IMG/VR virus record: IMGVR_UViG_3300031933_000215 | Location: 167,819 to 231,818 of that record | Strand: one strand, 5' to 3' | DNA: 64,000 bases | Shown: piece after piece, positions 39,901 to 46,671 of the stretch | How positions within the stretch are numbered: position 1 is the first letter of the stretch | Layout of the letters: each line of letters opens with the position of its first letter | Translations under genes and position numbers: made by a program | Notes under the pieces: generated by a model | Database searches by the model: none | Told to the model about the DNA's origin: nothing | Seen by the model: only the letters and a program-made list of their open reading frames with translations

Positions 39901-40823
39901 AGGACCCGCGTGCCAACGCCCTGATGGGGGCGGAGTTCTTGAAAGGAAACTACAACTTCATCGTTGAGGAACTGGGTCGTCGACCCAGTGACACCGATCT
40001 GTACCTGGCTCATTTCCTGGGTGCGGCCGGTGCGGTTAAGTTCCTCAAACAGGACACCAACGCGATTGCATCGCAGGTGTTCCCTGCCGCTGCCAAAGCG
40101 AACAAGTCGATCTTCATCCTACCCAGTGGACGAGCCCGGACCATCGGGGAAGTCTATCAGGTCATGGACGAGAAGGTGGCCAAGCATCGCCATGGTTTCG
40201 GTGGGCGTGACAGTGGACAACACACCGCCAACGATGAACAGTACTCCCCCGCTCAACCTCAGGTCGCCAATGGGGACATGATTCAGGTGAACGGTGCGGA
40301 CATGCCAACGGCGTATAAACACAAGTCTCAGGTGGGTCGCCCGCCGGGACAAGCGCCAATCAGCATGGCCCAACGTGCCAGTTCGACCGTGAATCCTGTG
40401 AACCAAACCAGCGCCTCGCCCGGTATGTCCATGGGTCAAGGACGACCACCGACTGGTGCACCCGGCGCGTCCGGTGTGCCGAATACCCCGCAGGAAGATC
40501 CGGTGATTCAACATCAGGCTGAACAGCGTCGTCAGGCGCTGGCGGCCGATCGACGTCAGCAAGTCCAAAACGCCCAAACGGCGAACTACTCGAAAGAGAT
40601 GGGCATGGTGATGGAGAAACAGTTGAAGATCCAAGAATCCATGCGGGATTACCTGAAAGAAATTGCGGGTAATATAGCCGGCGCCAAAGTGGATGAGGCG
40701 AGCACCTCAAGCAGTGGTGGGACTGGACAGGAAAGACCGTCCAATGATACGAGTAAACCAACACGCCCGCCTCAAGGGCCAGGATCTCGTAGCACGCCAC
40801 TACCGGTGAACCTGAAAGAGTAA
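33975..40823 (+). CDS. Tail tape-measure/cell-puncturing protein with lytic transglycosylase domain (phiKZ gp181-like)
   Basis: 2282 aa. SLT motifs IESAF, SSATGWFQFINATW, ANALMGAE and LYLAHFLG near 39680-40200; three internal beta repeats. Confidence 0.9.
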   Translation: MADKRKDLADDEFALPSLDLDDLDDGFDIPDQPEGPVRKFTVNFKRGFLEQTKTRTMMRNFLRGALPDGYSRAMAGAETAWEEGADIARSVAEHADDDLETIASKTEQLLPKLKRFAPKRAYDKIESRVSDARKGFASRDRRTLSQLQEESKANEEAEILRQALEGLDESYREEAQTSEQSAQRRFESERIERSIHEQIKRGQIDGINRQLGAIRGSVEHQVTYQDQITYRYQRKSLEMQYRSYFVLRDLRSYADATKKLHENAYSAIVHNTGLPDHAKTTQAERVRFGMQDRTSSAISGMMSQTLAEYMANYLPQLKENIKDKAISGVRGVGSMLSMGGPPITSETIGRMAGSEASEQAQRYAIPFLSRLARPFMRKASDRMGGYDHLANYAMNNAGSMIQDYTQDLNNTAGWRGMLKNAVRSVAPSYFLDDQIKDGSYQTIDREAAFNQLTQRSIVDIIPGYLSRLLHETRMMRTGRDDLDREVYDVTSGKFSGFKEAKANARKRVVTEVQRQNINNTLDEVIGSYDGDGELSPQAQEALRERLLRDAARGGRFDARQYAEGGYSADTDEETVEELTSFFKNRFEFDSNGRLVRSKDNFERLDAYSNAFLELRNVVPDPRGELRRLHGAGSQEMLRELGLIDSKHGVDRINYDRIWELYRSGDPVVDPEPPEMGTGGGPTTPPNDSPSFRQKLNDRVRNAGDVLSTRINEAREHDWKGTAQAGRDALNRRVDTVREKSKGMGFNPDVFSKFQPVTDTSMSFVTSQVNKAKDAFTPVGDVYNGLREQPLLLGRDLQAGNYIDVNTGNVIRSLKDVTGEIRNRSGWVVATAADLAGDLQDSTGRSLKSSMIADAMERGQGIAGSFGRGVRSQVQDWAAKVNELKDIYLPNREEPLMLARDIKAGKYYDVNSGERIETADDITGEVKDEDGNTVVTPEEYETGLVDNEGRSVKSGRAKAFMSRYLSITTAPGKLLGRVGMTAGRAAARGVGRLLKGKDRDAYLPGEDEPRITVQGLKRGQYFDAESGDAITSFDAIKGGVVDADGNMILSAEERQELVTAGGKKHRAAQGIVRRMIRAGTTGLAKKAAGAYWNWTKNYYRKLPGRLAKLPKVPGKIGSFLTAKPLRDKVGEWLNDDEEEVPEDAAKTPTDGLLKRILKTLDKRLPDEDPEKGSWQSILARRKKEDKEEAAEEESEKREGSLLKRLFGGVGGLLGAGGRWDEEEEEEEDDGDINAYGEYNGGDKEDKDRKKRRNRRNRSRKPRGKIGRLWQGAKNLAKGGWDKVKGLGRSVAGSKWGARALNVGKSFLGPKGWLARGAMAAGSAIAGAITAPVAITAAVVGGVAVGGYMYYKKRKRASGVFRELRLTQYGFSPNGWSNPGKVLDIEDVLSPGVVHQSSGMPKLELNKIDMEKLFEVSGVDKDDEEEVAVFAGWLEHRFKPIFLAYNHALAELAPEVTIQELDDKLPKEKGMKFLDMVTFKDNENSPYLYMHDPFDPGDTVGIDMDDIKDRIEEVKEVYKEHDEDGSSTAGKTAVAAATSGASANARRRVRDRATQTANRQNGLSGINPEDIKPYQFNRGRGGANRAVAAAGGGVVTIASTTGSGPAGFGKPSGMQSQTTDIAITPLQALRLRAYGFGSDLDQPTAEALLALEDRVFDGVTVQRSGNGSRMSFSLKPRELFDWWQEHYPNVPVVSGHEGPFRFGVWLQKKMGQVVKEYVQGVLQTGTTENYATAELDMTMDQKLQVATRIVNMRVIRGSGTDRYTQNIWQTHDYIQAEEPDWQEVAKLAEVDYEFMKRVAKEVKEKPQAKAAEATQSQANDTSRQQKPRDIHGQPTGIGTRPNPTQRGGGGRPSWTSDGGPMWQQYMPKGQVQMKGNVFDGFTKGNGGVWETIPMPRSNKSMEAAIPTLSAVAQMTGVDLGILVTFVSIESAFDYLVTAPTSSATGWFQFINATWDQMLNEHGSKYQLPADDGQRSLRKDPRANALMGAEFLKGNYNFIVEELGRRPSDTDLYLAHFLGAAGAVKFLKQDTNAIASQVFPAAAKANKSIFILPSGRARTIGEVYQVMDEKVAKHRHGFGGRDSGQHTANDEQYSPAQPQVANGDMIQVNGADMPTAYKHKSQVGRPPGQAPISMAQRASSTVNPVNQTSASPGMSMGQGRPPTGAPGASGVPNTPQEDPVIQHQAEQRRQALAADRRQQVQNAQTANYSKEMGMVMEKQLKIQESMRDYLKEIAGNIAGAKVDEASTSSSGGTGQERPSNDTSKPTRPPQGPGSRSTPLPVNLKE

Positions 40824-40877
40824 TCAACCCTGTTGGTCCCCGGCAATGCGCCGGGGACCTTTTATCCGGAGGTAAGA

Positions 40878-42884
40878 ATGGCGAATTTGAACCGTAACAG
40901 CTTATGGCTCCGCCATGCCTTCCTGCTGCCGACCAGTGAAGACATGTTGTCCTACGGGAGCAGAACCAAACGACGGTATGCCACGTCGGCGGCTTTTAAG
41001 TTTACCAACACTACGCTGGGTGGTAACTGGGCTATCAACAACCCACCCCAGTTCACCAGGTACGCTGATATCCGGCAACCTGGAAAGGGACGTACGGAAG
41101 CCGAACGCTCTCAGGGCATGGGTCGGTATTACAGCGAAGCCATTGATGATCCGAAACAGATCATCCATATGAGTTTTGGGGTCCCGCAGTTCTCCAGTTG
41201 GACCAGTTTCTTCACCAACTTCTACGACCGTAACGCGGCCTTGCTGGCCAACACCGGTCGGGTGTCTGGGCTTTGGTACAACGCCGGTTTTGTCGGGGGA
41301 TTCGTGGTAACGCTCCCACTGCAACCGTTCATCATGGGTGTTTCCGCCGTAAAACGAGTGTACGACTTCTTGGCAAAGAACCAGCCCAGTAAGTGGTACT
41401 ACTTCAAACCGACCATGCACGCGTACTGGTCAGCGGTAAATACCATCGCCAACGAAATGGCCATTGGGTTGGGACTGACACCCCGTGTCTTGGCACCCAC
41501 CCAGCTCGATTACAGTAACGATGGTAAAGCACCGAAGAAAGACCCGGGTCAAACCGTGGATGAGGATTTGCTGAAAAAGATCCACACGATGTTTCCGGAC
41601 ATTTTTCGTGAAGAGGGTGGTATCGATGTGATGTCCTTGGCCACTCGTACCCAGCGGATGTCGGACAACTCCCAACTAGCATTGGAACGTATGCAGGAAC
41701 AAGCTCGGAGCAACCAGGAACTCCGGGACAACTTTAGTAAGTACGTAGCGGAGAAAGAAACCGACCCCAACCCAGACATCTCTACCCAGAAGTACTTTGA
41801 AGAGTACCTTAAATCAGAGGCTGGTAAGGTAGCCGCTGAGGGCGCCACCACCGAGTCCATCAGCACGTGGGGCGACACGTCCTTCAAAGGACTGTATGAA
41901 TTCATGCGGGCACACCAACGGGACGGAAGTCAGTTTGCCAGTTTCCGGGTGAACCACAACGGGTCCATGTCCGAGTCGTTCAACAACTCGACGCGGGATT
42001 CCGAGGTGGCCCAGACACTGAACAGCAAAGTCGCCCAAGGTCGGCAGGCGAGCATGTCATTCATGGGTGGTAACATCACTGACATGTTCGGGGAGGCCAT
42101 GAACTACGTCCAGAGTTTTGTGGCTGGGGCGTTGGACAGTGTCAATTTGGGCGGCTTGGCCACGCTCACAGGCACAGCGTTCTTTGATATCCCAAAAATG
42201 TGGGATAGTTCCACGGCACAACTCCCACGGGCAGAATACACCGTCCCACTCCCGTCACCGTATGGGAACAAGTTGTCGCGGTTTATCAACATGTACGTAC
42301 CAATCGCCATGTTGTTAGCAGGCGGTCTCCCACGGTCGGCAGGGCGGAGTTCGTACACCAGTCCGTTCATCTGCCAGATCTTTCACCAAGGTCGGGTACA
42401 ATGTCAGCTCGGGATGATCGAATCCATCACCCTGACCCGGGGTACGGGTAACGTGGGCTGGAATGCTGATCACGACATGTTGGGGGCAGAACTGACCTTC
42501 TCGGTGGTGGACCTGTCCAGCATTATGCACATCCCAATTAAAAGCGGGTTTACCACAGGGAACTGGACCAAGGACCTGGCCTCGGCCGGTACCACTTTGG
42601 TCGCTGAGGGTCTCGGTGGGGACACCGCCGCCGGGCTGGCTCAAGCGGCAACCAACAGCCAGGTTTGGGACGAGCAGAGCTTGTTCTCCGATTATATGGC
42701 AGTGCTCACGTCGTTGCCGGTCTCAGACACCTACTATGTCAAGAACCGGCTGAACCTGAACATGACCCGAGCACTGCAAGGGTTTAAGAACTGGCGCTCG
42801 CCGAGTAACTTCTTGTCAATGACCATGGACACGGCTCCGGTCCGGGCGATCTCCGCGTTTGCCCAGACCAGTAACCGGTTCTAG
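40878..42884 (+). CDS. Tail/baseplate structural protein (phiKZ gp182-like)
   Basis: ATG 40878 after GGAGG; directly follows the gp181-like gene; LGMIESITLTRGTGNVGW motif. Confidence 0.7.
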   Translation: MANLNRNSLWLRHAFLLPTSEDMLSYGSRTKRRYATSAAFKFTNTTLGGNWAINNPPQFTRYADIRQPGKGRTEAERSQGMGRYYSEAIDDPKQIIHMSFGVPQFSSWTSFFTNFYDRNAALLANTGRVSGLWYNAGFVGGFVVTLPLQPFIMGVSAVKRVYDFLAKNQPSKWYYFKPTMHAYWSAVNTIANEMAIGLGLTPRVLAPTQLDYSNDGKAPKKDPGQTVDEDLLKKIHTMFPDIFREEGGIDVMSLATRTQRMSDNSQLALERMQEQARSNQELRDNFSKYVAEKETDPNPDISTQKYFEEYLKSEAGKVAAEGATTESISTWGDTSFKGLYEFMRAHQRDGSQFASFRVNHNGSMSESFNNSTRDSEVAQTLNSKVAQGRQASMSFMGGNITDMFGEAMNYVQSFVAGALDSVNLGGLATLTGTAFFDIPKMWDSSTAQLPRAEYTVPLPSPYGNKLSRFINMYVPIAMLLAGGLPRSAGRSSYTSPFICQIFHQGRVQCQLGMIESITLTRGTGNVGWNADHDMLGAELTFSVVDLSSIMHIPIKSGFTTGNWTKDLASAGTTLVAEGLGGDTAAGLAQAATNSQVWDEQSLFSDYMAVLTSLPVSDTYYVKNRLNLNMTRALQGFKNWRSPSNFLSMTMDTAPVRAISAFAQTSNRF

Positions 42885-44837: not shown

Positions 44838-45137
44838 ATGTACAAAAAACGTATTTGCGACGCCATTCTGGCACTGATTGTTTTCTTCCTGATCATGCTG
44901 GTGACCAGCCCCGACCTGTACGCCAAAGAAAAGACGTACGAGGTGGTGTGTCCGGCATTCAGCGATTGGTGTGTGTTGGTCAAAGGCGACACCGCCATCA
45001 AGTTAACCCGAGACCAGTTGCCCGAATTCATCCCCATCAGTTACGAAGTAGAACGGTGTCACATTGAGTTCTGTGTGAACGCCGACATGGATGTCATTGG
45101 GCTGAACCCGAATTACTTTCTCTGGAGACATCGATGA
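44838..45137 (+). CDS. Exported/membrane-anchored Cys-containing protein
   Basis: N-terminal hydrophobic helix and four Cys; ATG 44838 after GAGGGA. Confidence 0.55.
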   Translation: MYKKRICDAILALIVFFLIMLVTSPDLYAKEKTYEVVCPAFSDWCVLVKGDTAIKLTRDQLPEFIPISYEVERCHIEFCVNADMDVIGLNPNYFLWRHR

Positions 45138-45751
45138 AAATCTTCACCGGTGTGGGCAGTCGTGACATTCCCGGTCCACGGGGACGGCTGCTCAGTTTCA
45201 TTGCGTGCTACCTCGTCCGGTTGGGTTGGGGGTTTCGGTCAGGCGGTGCCGACGGCTCCGACTCGGAATTCGAACGCGGGGCCGTGCGGGCCACCGGGAC
45301 CAGCCAATCGGAACAGATTGAGATCTACCTTCCTTGGCCCGGGTTTAACGGGCGCATCGATGTTCCCGAGAATCGCATCTTGGGGAAGAAGTCCAACCAG
45401 GAAGTCGCGCGTCAAATTGCCAAGAAGATTCACCCTGCTGGTGGTAACCTCAAAGAATCACACCTGAACTTGCATGGCCGAAACGGCTACCAGGTATTGG
45501 GGGAGAACCTAGATTTGCCTTCGGACTTCATCGTCTACTACGCCGAACCCGATGGGAAAGGGAGCGTGAAAGGCGGGACACGGACAGCGGTCGAATTGGC
45601 ACGGTGTTTGGGAATTCCCGAACTCAACCTCTGGTATGATCATGTGGCCCGACTGCTGTTTGATCTGATCAAAGCCAATCACCCCGACCCGTTGTGGGAG
45701 TGTTACAAGCAACTGAAATTGGGCGAGTTCCGGGAATGGCTACATGGTTAA
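45134..45751 (+). CDS. DprA/Smf-like (SLOG superfamily) protein
   Basis: FTGVGSR, RSGGADGSD..FE, EIYLPW.GFN, HGRN.YQVLG and GGTRTAV motifs. Confidence 0.8.
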   Translation: MKIFTGVGSRDIPGPRGRLLSFIACYLVRLGWGFRSGGADGSDSEFERGAVRATGTSQSEQIEIYLPWPGFNGRIDVPENRILGKKSNQEVARQIAKKIHPAGGNLKESHLNLHGRNGYQVLGENLDLPSDFIVYYAEPDGKGSVKGGTRTAVELARCLGIPELNLWYDHVARLLFDLIKANHPDPLWECYKQLKLGEFREWLHG

Positions 45752-45895
45752 CTTTTCCAGGGTATCCCCAATATTATGTCAGACCTGTCCTGACACGATC
45801 TTTTACAATTTGATTCGCGGACACACTCAGGCGGTTTTACCGTCCCAAGCATCTGCAAATACAGATGCGGTCTTTACGAAGGCCAAAACCACGGT

Positions 45896-45926
45896 AGCCC
45901 GGGCACCGCTTCGGCGGTGCCCGCTA
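45896..45926 (+). terminator. Strong hairpin (probable terminator)
   Basis: CGGGCACCGC-TTCG-GCGGTGCCCG. Confidence 0.7.
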
Positions 45927-45970
45927 TTCCGTCACCCCATAAAAACTACCCCGGGTGTGATGGTATGTAC

Positions 45971-46038
45971 ACGTCGTGTTATCTGATGAGTTCCCGACGT
46001 TAAAAGGAACGAAACTCCCACGGAGTCATAAGAGGCAC
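45971..46038 (+). ncRNA. Type I hammerhead ribozyme with loop II pseudoknot
   Basis: Core CUGAUGA 45983-89; stem II GUUCC/GGAAC; GAAA 46011-14; stem III ACUCC/GGAGU; GUC cleavage site at 46027; stem I UUAU/AUAA; ACGUCG (45971-76) is complementary to loop II CGACGU (45995-46000). Confidence 0.88.
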
Positions 46039-46320
46039 ATGCGCCTCCCTTCATCGAGTTTACGGTTGGAGATGTTAGGCACCTGCTGGGTGGTGTGATT
46101 GGTAGTCACACCGCTCGTAACCGTACGGGCGACGTACCTTACCAGTCGTCGCCAAGTTGTCGCTTGGGCTTATTCGTGCTAAACAAGGAACTATCCCTGA
46201 GCAGGCAGCCTGTAGGCGTTTTCTACAGCGCGGGTGATCCGGAGATCCGCCTCGAAACTCAAGACGCCTATGGGGTGCTTAAATGGCATCTTGGCCTGTC
46301 CTTCGGGGCAGGCCTCTATA
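46028..46320 (+). ncRNA. Candidate structured non-coding RNA released by the hammerhead
   Basis: Multiple nested helices, no credible ORF, ends at terminator 46293-46314. Confidence 0.5.
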
Positions 46321-46322
46321 CC
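46293..46322 (+). terminator. Terminator hairpin
   Basis: GGCCTGTCC-TTCG-GGGCAGGCC. Confidence 0.7.
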
Positions 46323-46344
46323 GCATCTGAACGAGGGTCACATC

Positions 46345-46587
46345 ATGGCTTTTATTGCAACGGTACAAATCTTGGTAGACGAGCCCACCGCCGCTGAGGC
46401 GCGTGAGAACTTGGAACAGCTGTTTGAATCCGCCCGGGTTACATCGGTAGATCAAACCGATGACGATCGAAACTGGTTGGTGGATTGGGTGTTTGACGAG
46501 GTCTACGCCGCTGGCGAAGATGTCGATGACGCCATCACCAACGACACTTACGAAGAAGGGGACGCGTTCGAAGGAATGGACGACTGA
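46345..46587 (+). CDS. Small acidic hypothetical protein
   Basis: ATG 46345 after GAGGG. Confidence 0.6.
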   Translation: MAFIATVQILVDEPTAAEARENLEQLFESARVTSVDQTDDDRNWLVDWVFDEVYAAGEDVDDAITNDTYEEGDAFEGMDD

Positions 46588-46601: not shown

Positions 46602-46617
46602 CTATATCACTCAGGTG
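46602..46617 (+). promoter_or_regulatory. Early promoter motif CTATATCAC-TCAG-GTG
   Basis: Identical to the copy at 16476. Confidence 0.7.
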
Positions 46618-46671
46618 AGTTAAGTACTCAAAAAAAAAGACACACAACTGCAACCACAAAAGGAATCAACC

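What the first reader, a model, noticed from the sequence alone, without database searches (positions are those of the whole stretch)
46028..46320. Unclassified ~290-nt structured RNA framed by the hammerhead and a terminator: candidate ribozyme-matured phage ncRNA system
Seen: TACGGTT/AACCGTA (46061-67/46119-25) encloses a 13-bp hairpin with three G.U pairs (46088-46116). Further helices are GGCGACG/CGTCGCC, CCAAG/CTTGG, CTGTAG/CTACAG, GCGGGT/ATCCGC and GGTGC/GCATC, ending in a 9-bp TTCG terminator. No ORF with an RBS lies inside. It does not fit tRNA, tmRNA, SRP, RNase P or intron patterns that I can recognise. Inference: a stable 5'-OH ncRNA (resistant to 5'-monophosphate-dependent RNase E decay) could be a scaffold, a decoy for host defence or RNAP, or a packaged RNA. 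Nearby genes (DprA/SLOG-like protein, DEDDh exoribonuclease) are candidate partners, but that link is speculative.
Basis: partly seen in the sequence, partly recalled or inferred. Interest (0 to 1): 0.75.

Follow-up and report, generated by a model that had tools for sequence, protein, structure and literature searches.

The report
Hammerhead-led structured RNA in jumbo phage
A phiKZ-like jumbo phage carries a likely self-contained RNA unit (promoter, hammerhead ribozyme, about 290 nt of folded RNA, terminator) built around a hairpin that recurs in many unrelated phages and matches no Rfam 15 family, but the unit is optional, varies in size, and may simply be the leader of the next gene.

Summary
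The helices, the hammerhead and the terminator are all in the sequence at the stated coordinates. The + strand folds far better than shuffles (z = -4.8). The hammerhead core is canonical and is the only such site in the 232-kb genome. The terminator fits a hairpin + YTTATTCCG motif used about ten times in this genome. A phiKZ-type middle-promoter motif sits 16 nt upstream of the ribozyme.

Comparison changes the picture. Of four close relatives, two lack the RNA entirely, one keeps only the 3' ~125 nt without a ribozyme, and one has a shorter version with a degraded ribozyme.

The conserved part is one hairpin, 46205-46219 paired with 46264-46278. It has an invariant tandem U.G/G.U. A covariance model built without the window finds it here at 35 bits. 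The model also finds it behind hammerheads in two other lineages of phiKZ-like jumbo phages. In smaller phages and some proteobacterial MAGs it lies between ORFs without a ribozyme. Pairing is 97% with 9 of 16 pairs compensatory. Rfam has no match.

Most likely this is an accessory, ribozyme-trimmed leader/ncRNA unit upstream of a very acidic 80-aa protein. A trans-acting role is not excluded. There are no expression data.

The parts
45942..45967 (+). phiKZ-type middle-promoter-like element: AAAACTACC (45942-45950) and TATG (45964-45967), predicted start at G45967
   Evidence: It matches the published phiKZ motifs, AAanTTACc near -24 and T(-3)ATG(+1) (PMC4666361). The same arrangement is in L011 and L008 at the homologous place. 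Only two such sites exist in the genome. In silico only.
45976..46027 (+). Type I hammerhead ribozyme: stem I 5' strand 45979-45982, core 45983-45989, stem II 45990-46010, GAAA 46011-46014, stem III 46015-46025, U46026 C46027, cleavage before A46028
   Evidence: It is the only such site in the genome, against 0 in 20 shuffles. Stem I shows one compensatory change against L011. Homologous ribozymes are in L147 and L153. Rfam score is only 17.5 bits. Stem I is only 4 A-U pairs.
46028..46204 (+). Variable 5' domain: 5'-terminal hairpin 46032-46047, helix 46061-46067/46119-46125 enclosing the 13-bp hairpin 46088-46116, and window-specific hairpins 46128-46167
   Evidence: The 5' hairpin is shared with L011. 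The enclosing helix plus long G.U-rich hairpin has a covarying counterpart in L147, judged by eye. CAAGTTGTC lies 43 nt before the core in both the window and L153. The domain is absent from L008, L012 and L013.
46205..46278 (+). Conserved core hairpin: 5' strand 46205-46219, 3' strand 46264-46278, with a G.G mismatch, an invariant tandem U.G/G.U and a window-specific 44-nt apical insert (46220-46263) containing GCGGGT/ATCCGC
   Evidence: Model R2, built without the window, scores 35.1 bits (E about 5e-8 to 8e-8). Across 13 members 97.1% of cells pair, 9 of 16 pairs are compensatory, and 0 of 500 shuffles reach that. Single copy in this genome.
46272..46292 (+). Alternative hairpin 2 (GGGGUGCU / GGCAUCUU), which re-uses the 3' strand of the core's lower stem
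   Evidence: Present with covariation in most family members, e.g. GGUGC/GCACC against GAUGC/GCAUC. It is 5.2 kcal/mol less stable than the full core hairpin here.
46293..46322 (+). Terminator T2: 9-bp UUCG hairpin 46293-46314 followed by CTCTATACCG
   Evidence: It fits the genome's recurring hairpin + YTTATTCCG terminator motif. The stem covaries in L011 and L008. Similar terminators in related jumbo phages are picked up by R1.
46345..46587 (+). Downstream ORF: 80 aa, 24 D+E against 3 K+R, pI 4.05, with its RBS directly after T2
   Evidence: It is conserved at 75-85% identity in relatives with and without the RNA. It has no Pfam or PHROG family.

Best explanation
The interval is a real, strand-specific RNA unit of a phiKZ-like (Chimalliviridae-type) jumbo phage.

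Proposed steps:
1. A phiKZ-type middle promoter starts transcription at about G45967.
2. The first ~61 nt fold into a type I hammerhead that cuts after C46027. This removes the triphosphate end and anything transcribed from upstream, and leaves a 5'-OH RNA.
3. That RNA has a lineage-variable 5' domain followed by a conserved hairpin with an invariant tandem U.G/G.U.
4. Transcription stops, fully or partly, at the phage-type terminator T2, about 20 nt before the RBS of a very acidic 80-aa protein.

I read it as an accessory leader/ncRNA cassette. The conserved hairpin is a cis-acting mRNA element, probably a protein- or ribosome-sensitive stem that competes with hairpin 2. Smaller phages use the same hairpin between ORFs. 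Jumbo phages have enlarged it and placed it behind a ribozyme.

Termination at T2 would give the ~290-nt RNA. Read-through would give the mRNA of the acidic protein.

Shown: the sequence features, their conservation and covariation, and their modular presence or absence.
Inferred: transcription, cleavage, termination and every function.
For: Fold and strand:
- Fold z = -4.79 on the + strand against -3.31 on the - strand.
- The invariant G.U pairs would be A.C mismatches on the other strand.

Hammerhead:
- The core is canonical and is the only such site in 232 kb, with 0 in 20 shuffles.
- Homologous ribozymes with different stems sit 85-210 nt upstream of the same core hairpin in L011, L147 and L153.

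Promoter and terminator:
- The promoter motif matches the published phiKZ middle/late consensus and is conserved in L011 and L008.
- T2 belongs to the genome's terminator motif and covaries.

Core hairpin:
- R2, built without the window, scores 35.1 bits here.
- 97% paired, 9 of 16 pairs compensatory, 0 of 500 shuffles.
- R1, built from the window clade, finds the G001 copy at 26.4 bits, E = 7e-6, with the next best hit at 4.8 bits.

Cis reading:
- In smaller phages the hairpin starts 0-4 nt after a stop codon and ends 23-49 nt before the next start codon.
- No other promoter-like motif lies between T2 and ORF 46345.
- phiKZ-like phages are reported to make 5'UTR-derived sRNAs by premature termination (PMC11512511).
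- Prophage hammerheads are reported directly upstream of single genes such as ardA (PMC3088659).
Against: - No RNA data: no RNA run was listed, and the DNA runs only show the same phage.
- Stem I of the hammerhead is only 4 A-U pairs. The L011 copy has C at core position 4 and no clean stem III. The ribozyme may therefore be weak or decaying.
- Rfam scores the ribozyme far below threshold.
- L012 and L013 keep the same ORF without the RNA, so the ORF does not need it.
- A strong terminator between the RNA and the ORF, and different downstream genes in G001 and G006, fit a stand-alone RNA equally well.
- Only 4-5 jumbo-phage members exist. The 5' domain has almost no comparative support.
Confidence: 0.5

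Rival explanations
1. It is a stand-alone, trans-acting ncRNA. The ribozyme-trimmed, terminator-ended ~290-nt RNA accumulates and acts on its own. Its conserved U.G/G.U hairpin would bind and titrate a host or phage RNA-binding protein or nuclease, as a decoy or scaffold. Closeness to ORF 46345 would be incidental.
For: - It has its own promoter-like motif and a consensus terminator.
- The same ribozyme-RNA-terminator unit lies next to unrelated genes in G001 (a NUMOD4 endonuclease) and in G006 (just after a tRNA-Thr).
- There is one copy per jumbo genome.
- Hammerheads also sit directly 5' of GOLLD RNAs in L016 and L018, so ribozyme-defined 5' ends of phage ncRNAs recur.
Against: - In smaller phages the same hairpin is plainly an intergenic mRNA element with no terminator or ribozyme.
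- Size and 5' domain are not conserved even among close relatives.
- No partner protein co-varies with presence of the RNA.
- There are no expression data.
Confidence: 0.25
2. It is a decaying remnant of a mobile cassette. The region between two similar terminators (T1 and T2) is a recombination-prone slot that gains and loses inserts, for example with homing-endonuclease traffic. The present RNA would be a leftover with little or no function.
For: - The slot holds 23, 45, ~150, ~270 or ~390 nt in five close relatives.
- The ribozyme is weak here and degraded in L011.
- An HNH/NUMOD4 endonuclease lies directly downstream in G001.
- T1 and T2 share the same 3' motif.
Against: - The core hairpin keeps pairing through many compensatory changes and keeps invariant wobble pairs across very distant phages. 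That indicates selection.
- The hammerhead core in the window is fully canonical.
- Near-identical copies of this phage in several environments show one substitution in the stretch (C46217T in run X7). These are essentially the same phage at low coverage, so this is weak evidence.
Confidence: 0.17
3. It is a DNA-level signal or an unrecognised protein-coding region. The inverted repeats would act in double-stranded DNA as an operator, origin or recombination site, or a small ORF would be encoded.
For: A GTG-started 100-aa frame (46095-46397) overlaps the region. Imperfect inverted repeats are common protein-binding sites.
Against: - The invariant G.U pairs and a 21 kcal/mol strand asymmetry argue for a single-stranded + strand.
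- The element always points the same way as the flanking genes.
- Indels among relatives do not respect any reading frame, and there is no Shine-Dalgarno.
Confidence: 0.03

Closest known systems
Hammerhead ribozymes flanking single genes in prophages and phages (Perreault et al. 2011, PMC3088659)
   Same: A canonical hammerhead lies in a phage intergenic region, upstream of a small accessory gene. [quoted passage not shown] In haloviruses the mapped transcript 5' end lies at the cleavage site.
   Different: Here the ribozyme is separated from the ORF by ~290 nt of structured RNA and a terminator. It is coupled in three jumbo-phage lineages to one particular conserved hairpin. There is only one ribozyme, not a flanking pair or triplet.
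5'UTR-derived sRNAs made by premature termination in phiKZ-like phages (201phi2-1 and phiKZ; PMC11512511)
   Same: A phiKZ-type promoter is followed closely by a phage-type terminator upstream of an ORF, giving a short structured RNA. The host family is the same.
   Different: Hammerheads are not mentioned in the passages and sections I read. The conserved sRNA they describe lies upstream of the gp182/gp277 homologue, which is ORF 40833-42884 here and not this locus. No sequence relation was tested.
GOLLD and ROOL large phage-associated ncRNAs
   Same: They are phage-borne structured RNAs that often lie near tRNA genes. The G006 member of the present family lies just after a tRNA-Thr.
   Different: There is no Rfam match to GOLLD or ROOL here. 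This RNA is much smaller, poorly conserved outside one hairpin, and shows no multistem conserved core.
Processing or attenuator hairpins between phage genes (T7-type RNase III sites; HK022 put-type antiterminator RNAs)
   Same: A ~16-20-bp irregular hairpin with a conserved lower stem and internal mismatch sits tightly between ORFs, or just before a terminator. This is a resemblance from general knowledge only.
   Different: No cleavage or antitermination was tested. The phage encodes no RNase III. The sequence matches no described site that I could check.

Membership tests
Hammerhead ribozyme (type I topology) | Catalytic core C3-U4-G5-A6-N7-G8-A9 ... G12-A13-A14, with an A15.1-U16.1 pair and H17 at the cleavage site | tested here: met
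   CUGAUGA 45983-45989, GAAA 46011-46014, U46026, C46027. The L011 copy has C at position 4.
Hammerhead ribozyme (type I topology) | Three helices around the core, with pairs directly adjacent to the core | tested here: met
   Stem II 5 bp, stem III 4 bp plus A15.1-U16.1, stem I 4 bp and all A-U. Stem I shows one compensatory change against L011. Stems differ but are kept in L147 and L153.
Hammerhead ribozyme (type I topology) | Score at or above Rfam's gathering threshold | tested here: not met
   Best is RF00008 at 17.5 bits against 48.5. The other clear phage hammerheads in L016-L020 and L153 also gave no gathering-level hit, so this test is insensitive for them.
Hammerhead ribozyme (type I topology) | Site-specific self-cleavage giving a 2',3'-cyclic phosphate and a 5'-OH | not testable with these tools
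   Needs in vitro transcription or cyclic-phosphate/5'-OH RNA-seq.
WAUGGRGUGC flanks pairing around a G.G mismatch, a tandem U.G/G.U, and a variable perfect upper stem | tested here: met
   Window 46202-46281 scores 35.1 bits with a model that did not include it.
phiKZ-type intrinsic terminator | GC-rich hairpin followed by the U-rich YTTATTCCG-like tract seen at other gene ends of the same genome | tested here: met
   T2 and T1 are among about 10 strong instances in the genome. Termination itself was not tested.
phiKZ middle/late promoter | AAanTTACc near -24 and TATG with the start at G | tested here: met
   AAAACTACC 45942-45950 (centre at -21) and TATG 45964-45967. Activity was not tested, and this phage's own RNA polymerase specificity is unknown.
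tRNA / tmRNA / known Rfam RNAs (GOLLD, ROOL, HEARO, group I intron, riboswitches, 6S, RNase P, SRP) | Match to ARAGORN or to any of 4227 Rfam models | tested here: not met
   No tRNA or tmRNA. No gathering-level Rfam hit in the window. Only chance-level hits at E up to 10.
RNase III processing site | Cleavage by RNase III at a defined position of a ~20-bp irregular hairpin | not testable with these tools
   Only the shape and the intergenic position resemble it. The phage has no RNase III gene.

The most novel reading that the evidence does not exclude
The conserved U.G/G.U hairpin could be a new, widespread class of phage RNA element with an active role. One candidate role is a put-like RNA that makes RNA polymerase read through the terminator placed right behind it. 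Another is a new processing or self-cleaving module that travels with hammerheads. In that case jumbo phages would have turned it into a ribozyme-matured, free-standing regulatory RNA.
Probability: 0.12. Interest if true: 0.8.

Novelty: new variant of a known kind. Interest (0 to 1): 0.5.

Why it matters
Hammerheads are common in phages, but their purpose is mostly unknown. Here one is tied, in three lineages of nucleus-forming-type jumbo phages, to a specific conserved hairpin and a terminator. That gives a concrete, testable unit for asking what ribozyme-defined 5'-OH ends are for.

The hairpin itself has strong covariation, invariant wobble pairs and a fixed position between phage ORFs. It matches no Rfam family, so it is a candidate new RNA motif.

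The unit sits upstream of a strongly acidic small protein, in a slot that changes between close relatives. That is the sort of place where accessory or anti-defence functions are often found, but this is inference only.

Tried and rejected
- Rfam at gathering and at E up to 10: nothing meaningful. The weak isrK, SorY and ClpQY-promoter hits are just hairpins.
- ARAGORN: no tRNA or tmRNA in the window or the genome.
- blastn of the intergenic region against 50,697 phage records: no match.
- nhmmer against syntenic loci of six related jumbo phages at 56-60% protein identity: no match. Those loci carry tRNAs further downstream instead.
- The search for related loci with single flanking proteins: nothing.
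- Pattern scan for the conserved upstream module in metagenome and viral contigs: only the phage itself.
None had a continuing helix, so the scan was wasted.
- R1 with default filters missed the G001 copy. It was found only with filters off.
- Sequencing runs: only DNA runs of the same phage, with no variation of use. No RNA run was listed.
- Strict core pattern in 185,579 prokaryote genomes: nothing. A looser pattern found a few MAG contigs.
- RtcB and RNase III in the phage genome: absent. An encoded ligase or processing partner is therefore not supported.
- The idea that CCTATGGGG is a late promoter was dropped once it proved to be the 3' strand of the conserved helix.

Full report
**Context**

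The window is the last 64 kb of a 231,818-bp IMG/VR phage record with direct terminal repeats. Its 683-aa structural protein (40833-42884) is 56-58% identical to proteins of PhiPA3, Noxifer and phiKZ-type Pseudomonas phages. The phage is therefore a phiKZ-like (Chimalliviridae-type) jumbo phage.

Near-identical DNA occurs in gas-well, subsurface, freshwater and marine metagenomes.

The finding lies in a 593-nt gap. Upstream is a DprA-like gene (45134-45751, phrog_768). Downstream is an 80-aa ORF (46345-46587) with no family assignment. All neighbouring genes are on the + strand.

**The observation**

- The 293 nt fold at -126.6 kcal/mol, z = -4.79, with no shuffle as good.
- The reverse strand gives -105.8, z = -3.31. 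The structure is therefore strand-specific, largely through G.U pairs.
- There is no tRNA or tmRNA in the window or the whole genome. There is no Rfam match at gathering level, and only chance-level hits at E up to 10.

**The hammerhead**

The layout is:
- core CUGAUGA at 45983-45989;
- stem II of 5 bp at 45990-46010, with an 11-nt loop;
- GAAA at 46011-46014;
- stem III CUCC/GGAG at 46015-46025;
- U46026 and C46027, with cleavage before A46028.

Stem I is only UUAU/AUAA, followed by a G.G mismatch.

Rfam gives 17.5 bits against a 48.5-bit threshold. A simple descriptor finds one site in the real genome and none in 20 shuffled genomes. I accept it as a genuine hammerhead with a weak stem I. 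Activity is untested.

**Promoter and terminators**

*Terminators.* A GC-rich hairpin followed by YTTATTCCG recurs at about ten strong sites in this genome. Two of them are in this gap: T1 (about 45900-45937) and T2 (46293-46322). Model R1 also picks up such terminators in related jumbo phages.

*Promoter.* Between T1 and the ribozyme lie AAAACTACC (45942-45950) and TATG (45964-45967).
- Published work on phiKZ defines middle promoters by AAanTTACc near -24.
- It defines late promoters by T(-3)ATG(+1), with the start at G (PMC4666361).
- The same two-part arrangement is at the homologous place in L011 and L008.
- It occurs only twice in this genome.

The predicted start, G45967, is 16 nt before the ribozyme core.

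A different, much commoner promoter-like motif, CTATATCACCCnnnTGA, precedes at least ten genes. A further copy at 46605 precedes the next gene, ORF 46672. It does not precede ORF 46345.

**Close relatives**

Protein searches found four relatives with the same gene order. Their 80-aa ORF is 75-85% identical and their DprA-like gene 64-65% identical. Aligning the gaps gives three zones.

1. An upstream module (window about 45795-45937) is conserved in all five. It has covarying hairpins, with 12 of 32 pairs compensatory.
2. The last hairpin before the RBS (T2) is present in all five.
3. The stretch between T1 and T2 varies:
   - 23 nt in L013;
   - 45 nt in L012;
   - about 150 nt in L008, with the promoter motif but no ribozyme;
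   - about 270 nt in L011, with a ribozyme that has C at core position 4 and no clean stem III;
   - about 390 nt in the window.

The 290-nt RNA is therefore an optional insert of variable size, not a conserved gene of this clade. The DprA-like and DEDDh/RNase H-like genes are present regardless.

**The conserved part**

The window, L011 and L008 share a long helix. GCAGCCUGUAGGYGU pairs with ACRCCUAUGGGGUGC, with one compensatory change. In the window this is 46205-46219 with 46264-46278.

*G001.* A scan for the ribozyme's stem II sequence found L020, which lies in G001, a complete 219.8-kb phage.
- Its structural protein is 42% identical to the window's.
- There a hammerhead is followed by about 330 nt of non-coding RNA, the same helix with a quite different upper stem, and a terminator.
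- Model R1, built only from the window clade, hits that place at 26.4 bits, E = 7e-6. The next best hit is 4.8 bits.

*Exact-flank scan.* A scan for the exact helix flanks found further members.
- L153 lies in G006, a complete 244.7-kb phage with 40-45% structural-protein identity. The order there is tRNA-Thr, about 20 nt, a hammerhead, about 140 nt, the hairpin, then a terminator-like hairpin.
- Several smaller phage contigs (L148, L149, L150, L152, L154, L155) carry a compact 46-nt version with no ribozyme.

*Model R2.* R2 was built from six of those sequences, not including the window.
- It scores the window at 35.1 bits, L011 at 37.8, G001 at 37.1 and L008 at 24.5.
- On 13 members, 97.1% of cells pair and 9 of 16 pairs show compensatory change. 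No shuffle in 500 reaches the observed values.
- A C-G pair and a tandem U.G/G.U are invariant.

*Distribution.*
- There is one copy in each of G000, G001 and G006, and none in two other jumbo relatives.
- The smaller phages have 2-3 copies, 0.7-1.3 kb apart. Each starts 0-4 nt after a stop codon and ends 23-49 nt before the next start codon.
- Copies also occur on MAG contigs of Sulfuritalea, Burkholderiaceae and Paracoccaceae.
- Rfam has nothing at these sites.

**A second, competing hairpin**

In most members the 3' strand of the lower stem (GGGGUGC) can instead pair with a downstream GCACC or GCAUC. This pairing covaries: GGUGC/GCACC in one copy, GAUGC/GCAUC in another.

The full core hairpin is favoured by 5-7 kcal/mol. 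Hairpin 2 should therefore form only if the lower stem is opened, for example by a terminating ribosome in the small phages or by a bound protein.

**The 5' domain (46028-46204)**

- The hairpin right after the cleavage site is shared with L011.
- The TACGGTT/AACCGTA helix enclosing the 13-bp G.U-rich hairpin has a counterpart in G001. That counterpart has different stem sequences, a similar loop and a similar 3' flank. This rests on two sequences compared by eye.
- CAAGTTGTC lies exactly 43 nt before the core in both the window and L153.
- GGCGACG/CGTCGCC and CCAAG/CTTGG have no counterpart anywhere.

**Interpretation**

The best-supported reading is an accessory RNA cassette: promoter, hammerhead, variable domain, conserved hairpin, terminator.

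Because T2 lies only about 20 nt before the RBS, and no other promoter motif intervenes, ORF 46345 probably depends on read-through of T2. The ~290-nt RNA and the leader of that mRNA would then be two outcomes of one transcription unit.

This fits two published observations. phiKZ-like phages make 5'UTR-derived sRNAs by premature termination (PMC11512511). Hammerheads lie directly upstream of single accessory genes such as ardA in prophages (PMC3088659).

The downstream protein is extremely acidic: 24 D+E against 3 K+R, pI 4.05. That invites an anti-restriction-like guess, but nothing was tested.

A stand-alone trans-acting RNA remains a serious rival, because the unit sits next to unrelated genes in G001 and G006. 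A decaying mobile remnant is also possible, given the weak stem I and the degraded L011 ribozyme.

The phage encodes neither RtcB nor RNase III.

**Limits**

- There are no expression data of any kind.
- Only four or five jumbo-phage members exist.
- The loci used as background for R2 had been selected by the same sequence flanks, so their scores of 15-24 bits are not a fair null. The independent figures are the whole-genome searches and the R1 result.
- E-values from the shortened calibration are rough.

Noticed in passing
window 45795-45937: An upstream module is conserved in all five clade members. It has several hairpins and ends in a long stem (ACGGUAGC...GCUAUUCCGU) that contains terminator T1. 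12 of 32 predicted pairs show compensatory change. It is preceded by a conserved CCCYAATAYTATGTC block. It may be a conserved sRNA or the 3' UTR of the DprA-like gene.
   Followed up: partly
L016:6186-7077(-) and L018:5724-6564(-): In two unrelated phage contigs a sigma-70-like promoter is followed by a canonical hammerhead directly at the 5' end of a GOLLD RNA (Rfam 201.8 and 189.5 bits), within tRNA arrays. My one literature search and the two papers it returned turned up no description of this.
   Followed up: partly
window 46605-46622, and at least 10 other sites in the genome (e.g. window 43225, 53363, 57422): A promoter-like motif, CTATATCACCCnnnTGA, recurs upstream of many genes. It is probably one promoter class of this phage's own RNA polymerases.
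   Followed up: partly
window 45900-45937, 46293-46322, 20950, 56973 and other genome sites: A genome-wide terminator motif: a GC-rich hairpin, often with a UUCG loop, followed by YTTATTCCG. Similar sites occur in related jumbo phages.
   Followed up: partly
G000:C1:21413-21600 (outside the window): This is the only other middle-promoter-like site in the genome (AAAAATACG ... TATG). It is followed after about 150 nt by a consensus terminator, inside a 443-nt gap. It may be a second small transcription unit or a small ORF.
   Followed up: no
window 46345-46587: An 80-aa protein with 24 acidic and 3 basic residues, pI 4.05, and no Pfam or PHROG family. It is found only in five close relatives. 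A DNA-mimic-like or anti-defence role is a guess.
   Followed up: partly
L148, L149, L154 (G002, G003, G005); L160, L162, L163: The 46-nt hairpin occurs in 2-3 copies flanking single genes in smaller phages. The flanked genes include a DnaN-like clamp and a DUF7249 protein. It also occurs on MAG contigs of Sulfuritalea, Burkholderiaceae and Paracoccaceae.
   Followed up: partly
L147:4406-4903(-) (G001): A NUMOD4/HNH-type homing endonuclease lies directly downstream of the G001 copy of the ribozyme-RNA unit. This hints that the unit sits in mobile or variable DNA.
   Followed up: no
L017 and L019: Hammerheads with the same stem II sequence lie about 0.7-1 kb from pistol ribozymes in two other phage contigs.
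   Followed up: no
window 40823-40833: ORF 40833-42884 is the homologue of PhiPA3 gp214, which equates with phiKZ gp182. A conserved 5'UTR sRNA is reported upstream of that gene in phiKZ-like phages (PMC11512511). Here the upstream 2282-aa ORF ends only about 10 nt before it, so that sRNA may be absent or embedded.
   Followed up: no
whole genome G000: ARAGORN finds no tRNA gene in the 232-kb genome. Related jumbo phages carry several tRNAs a few kb downstream of the homologous structural gene.
   Followed up: no
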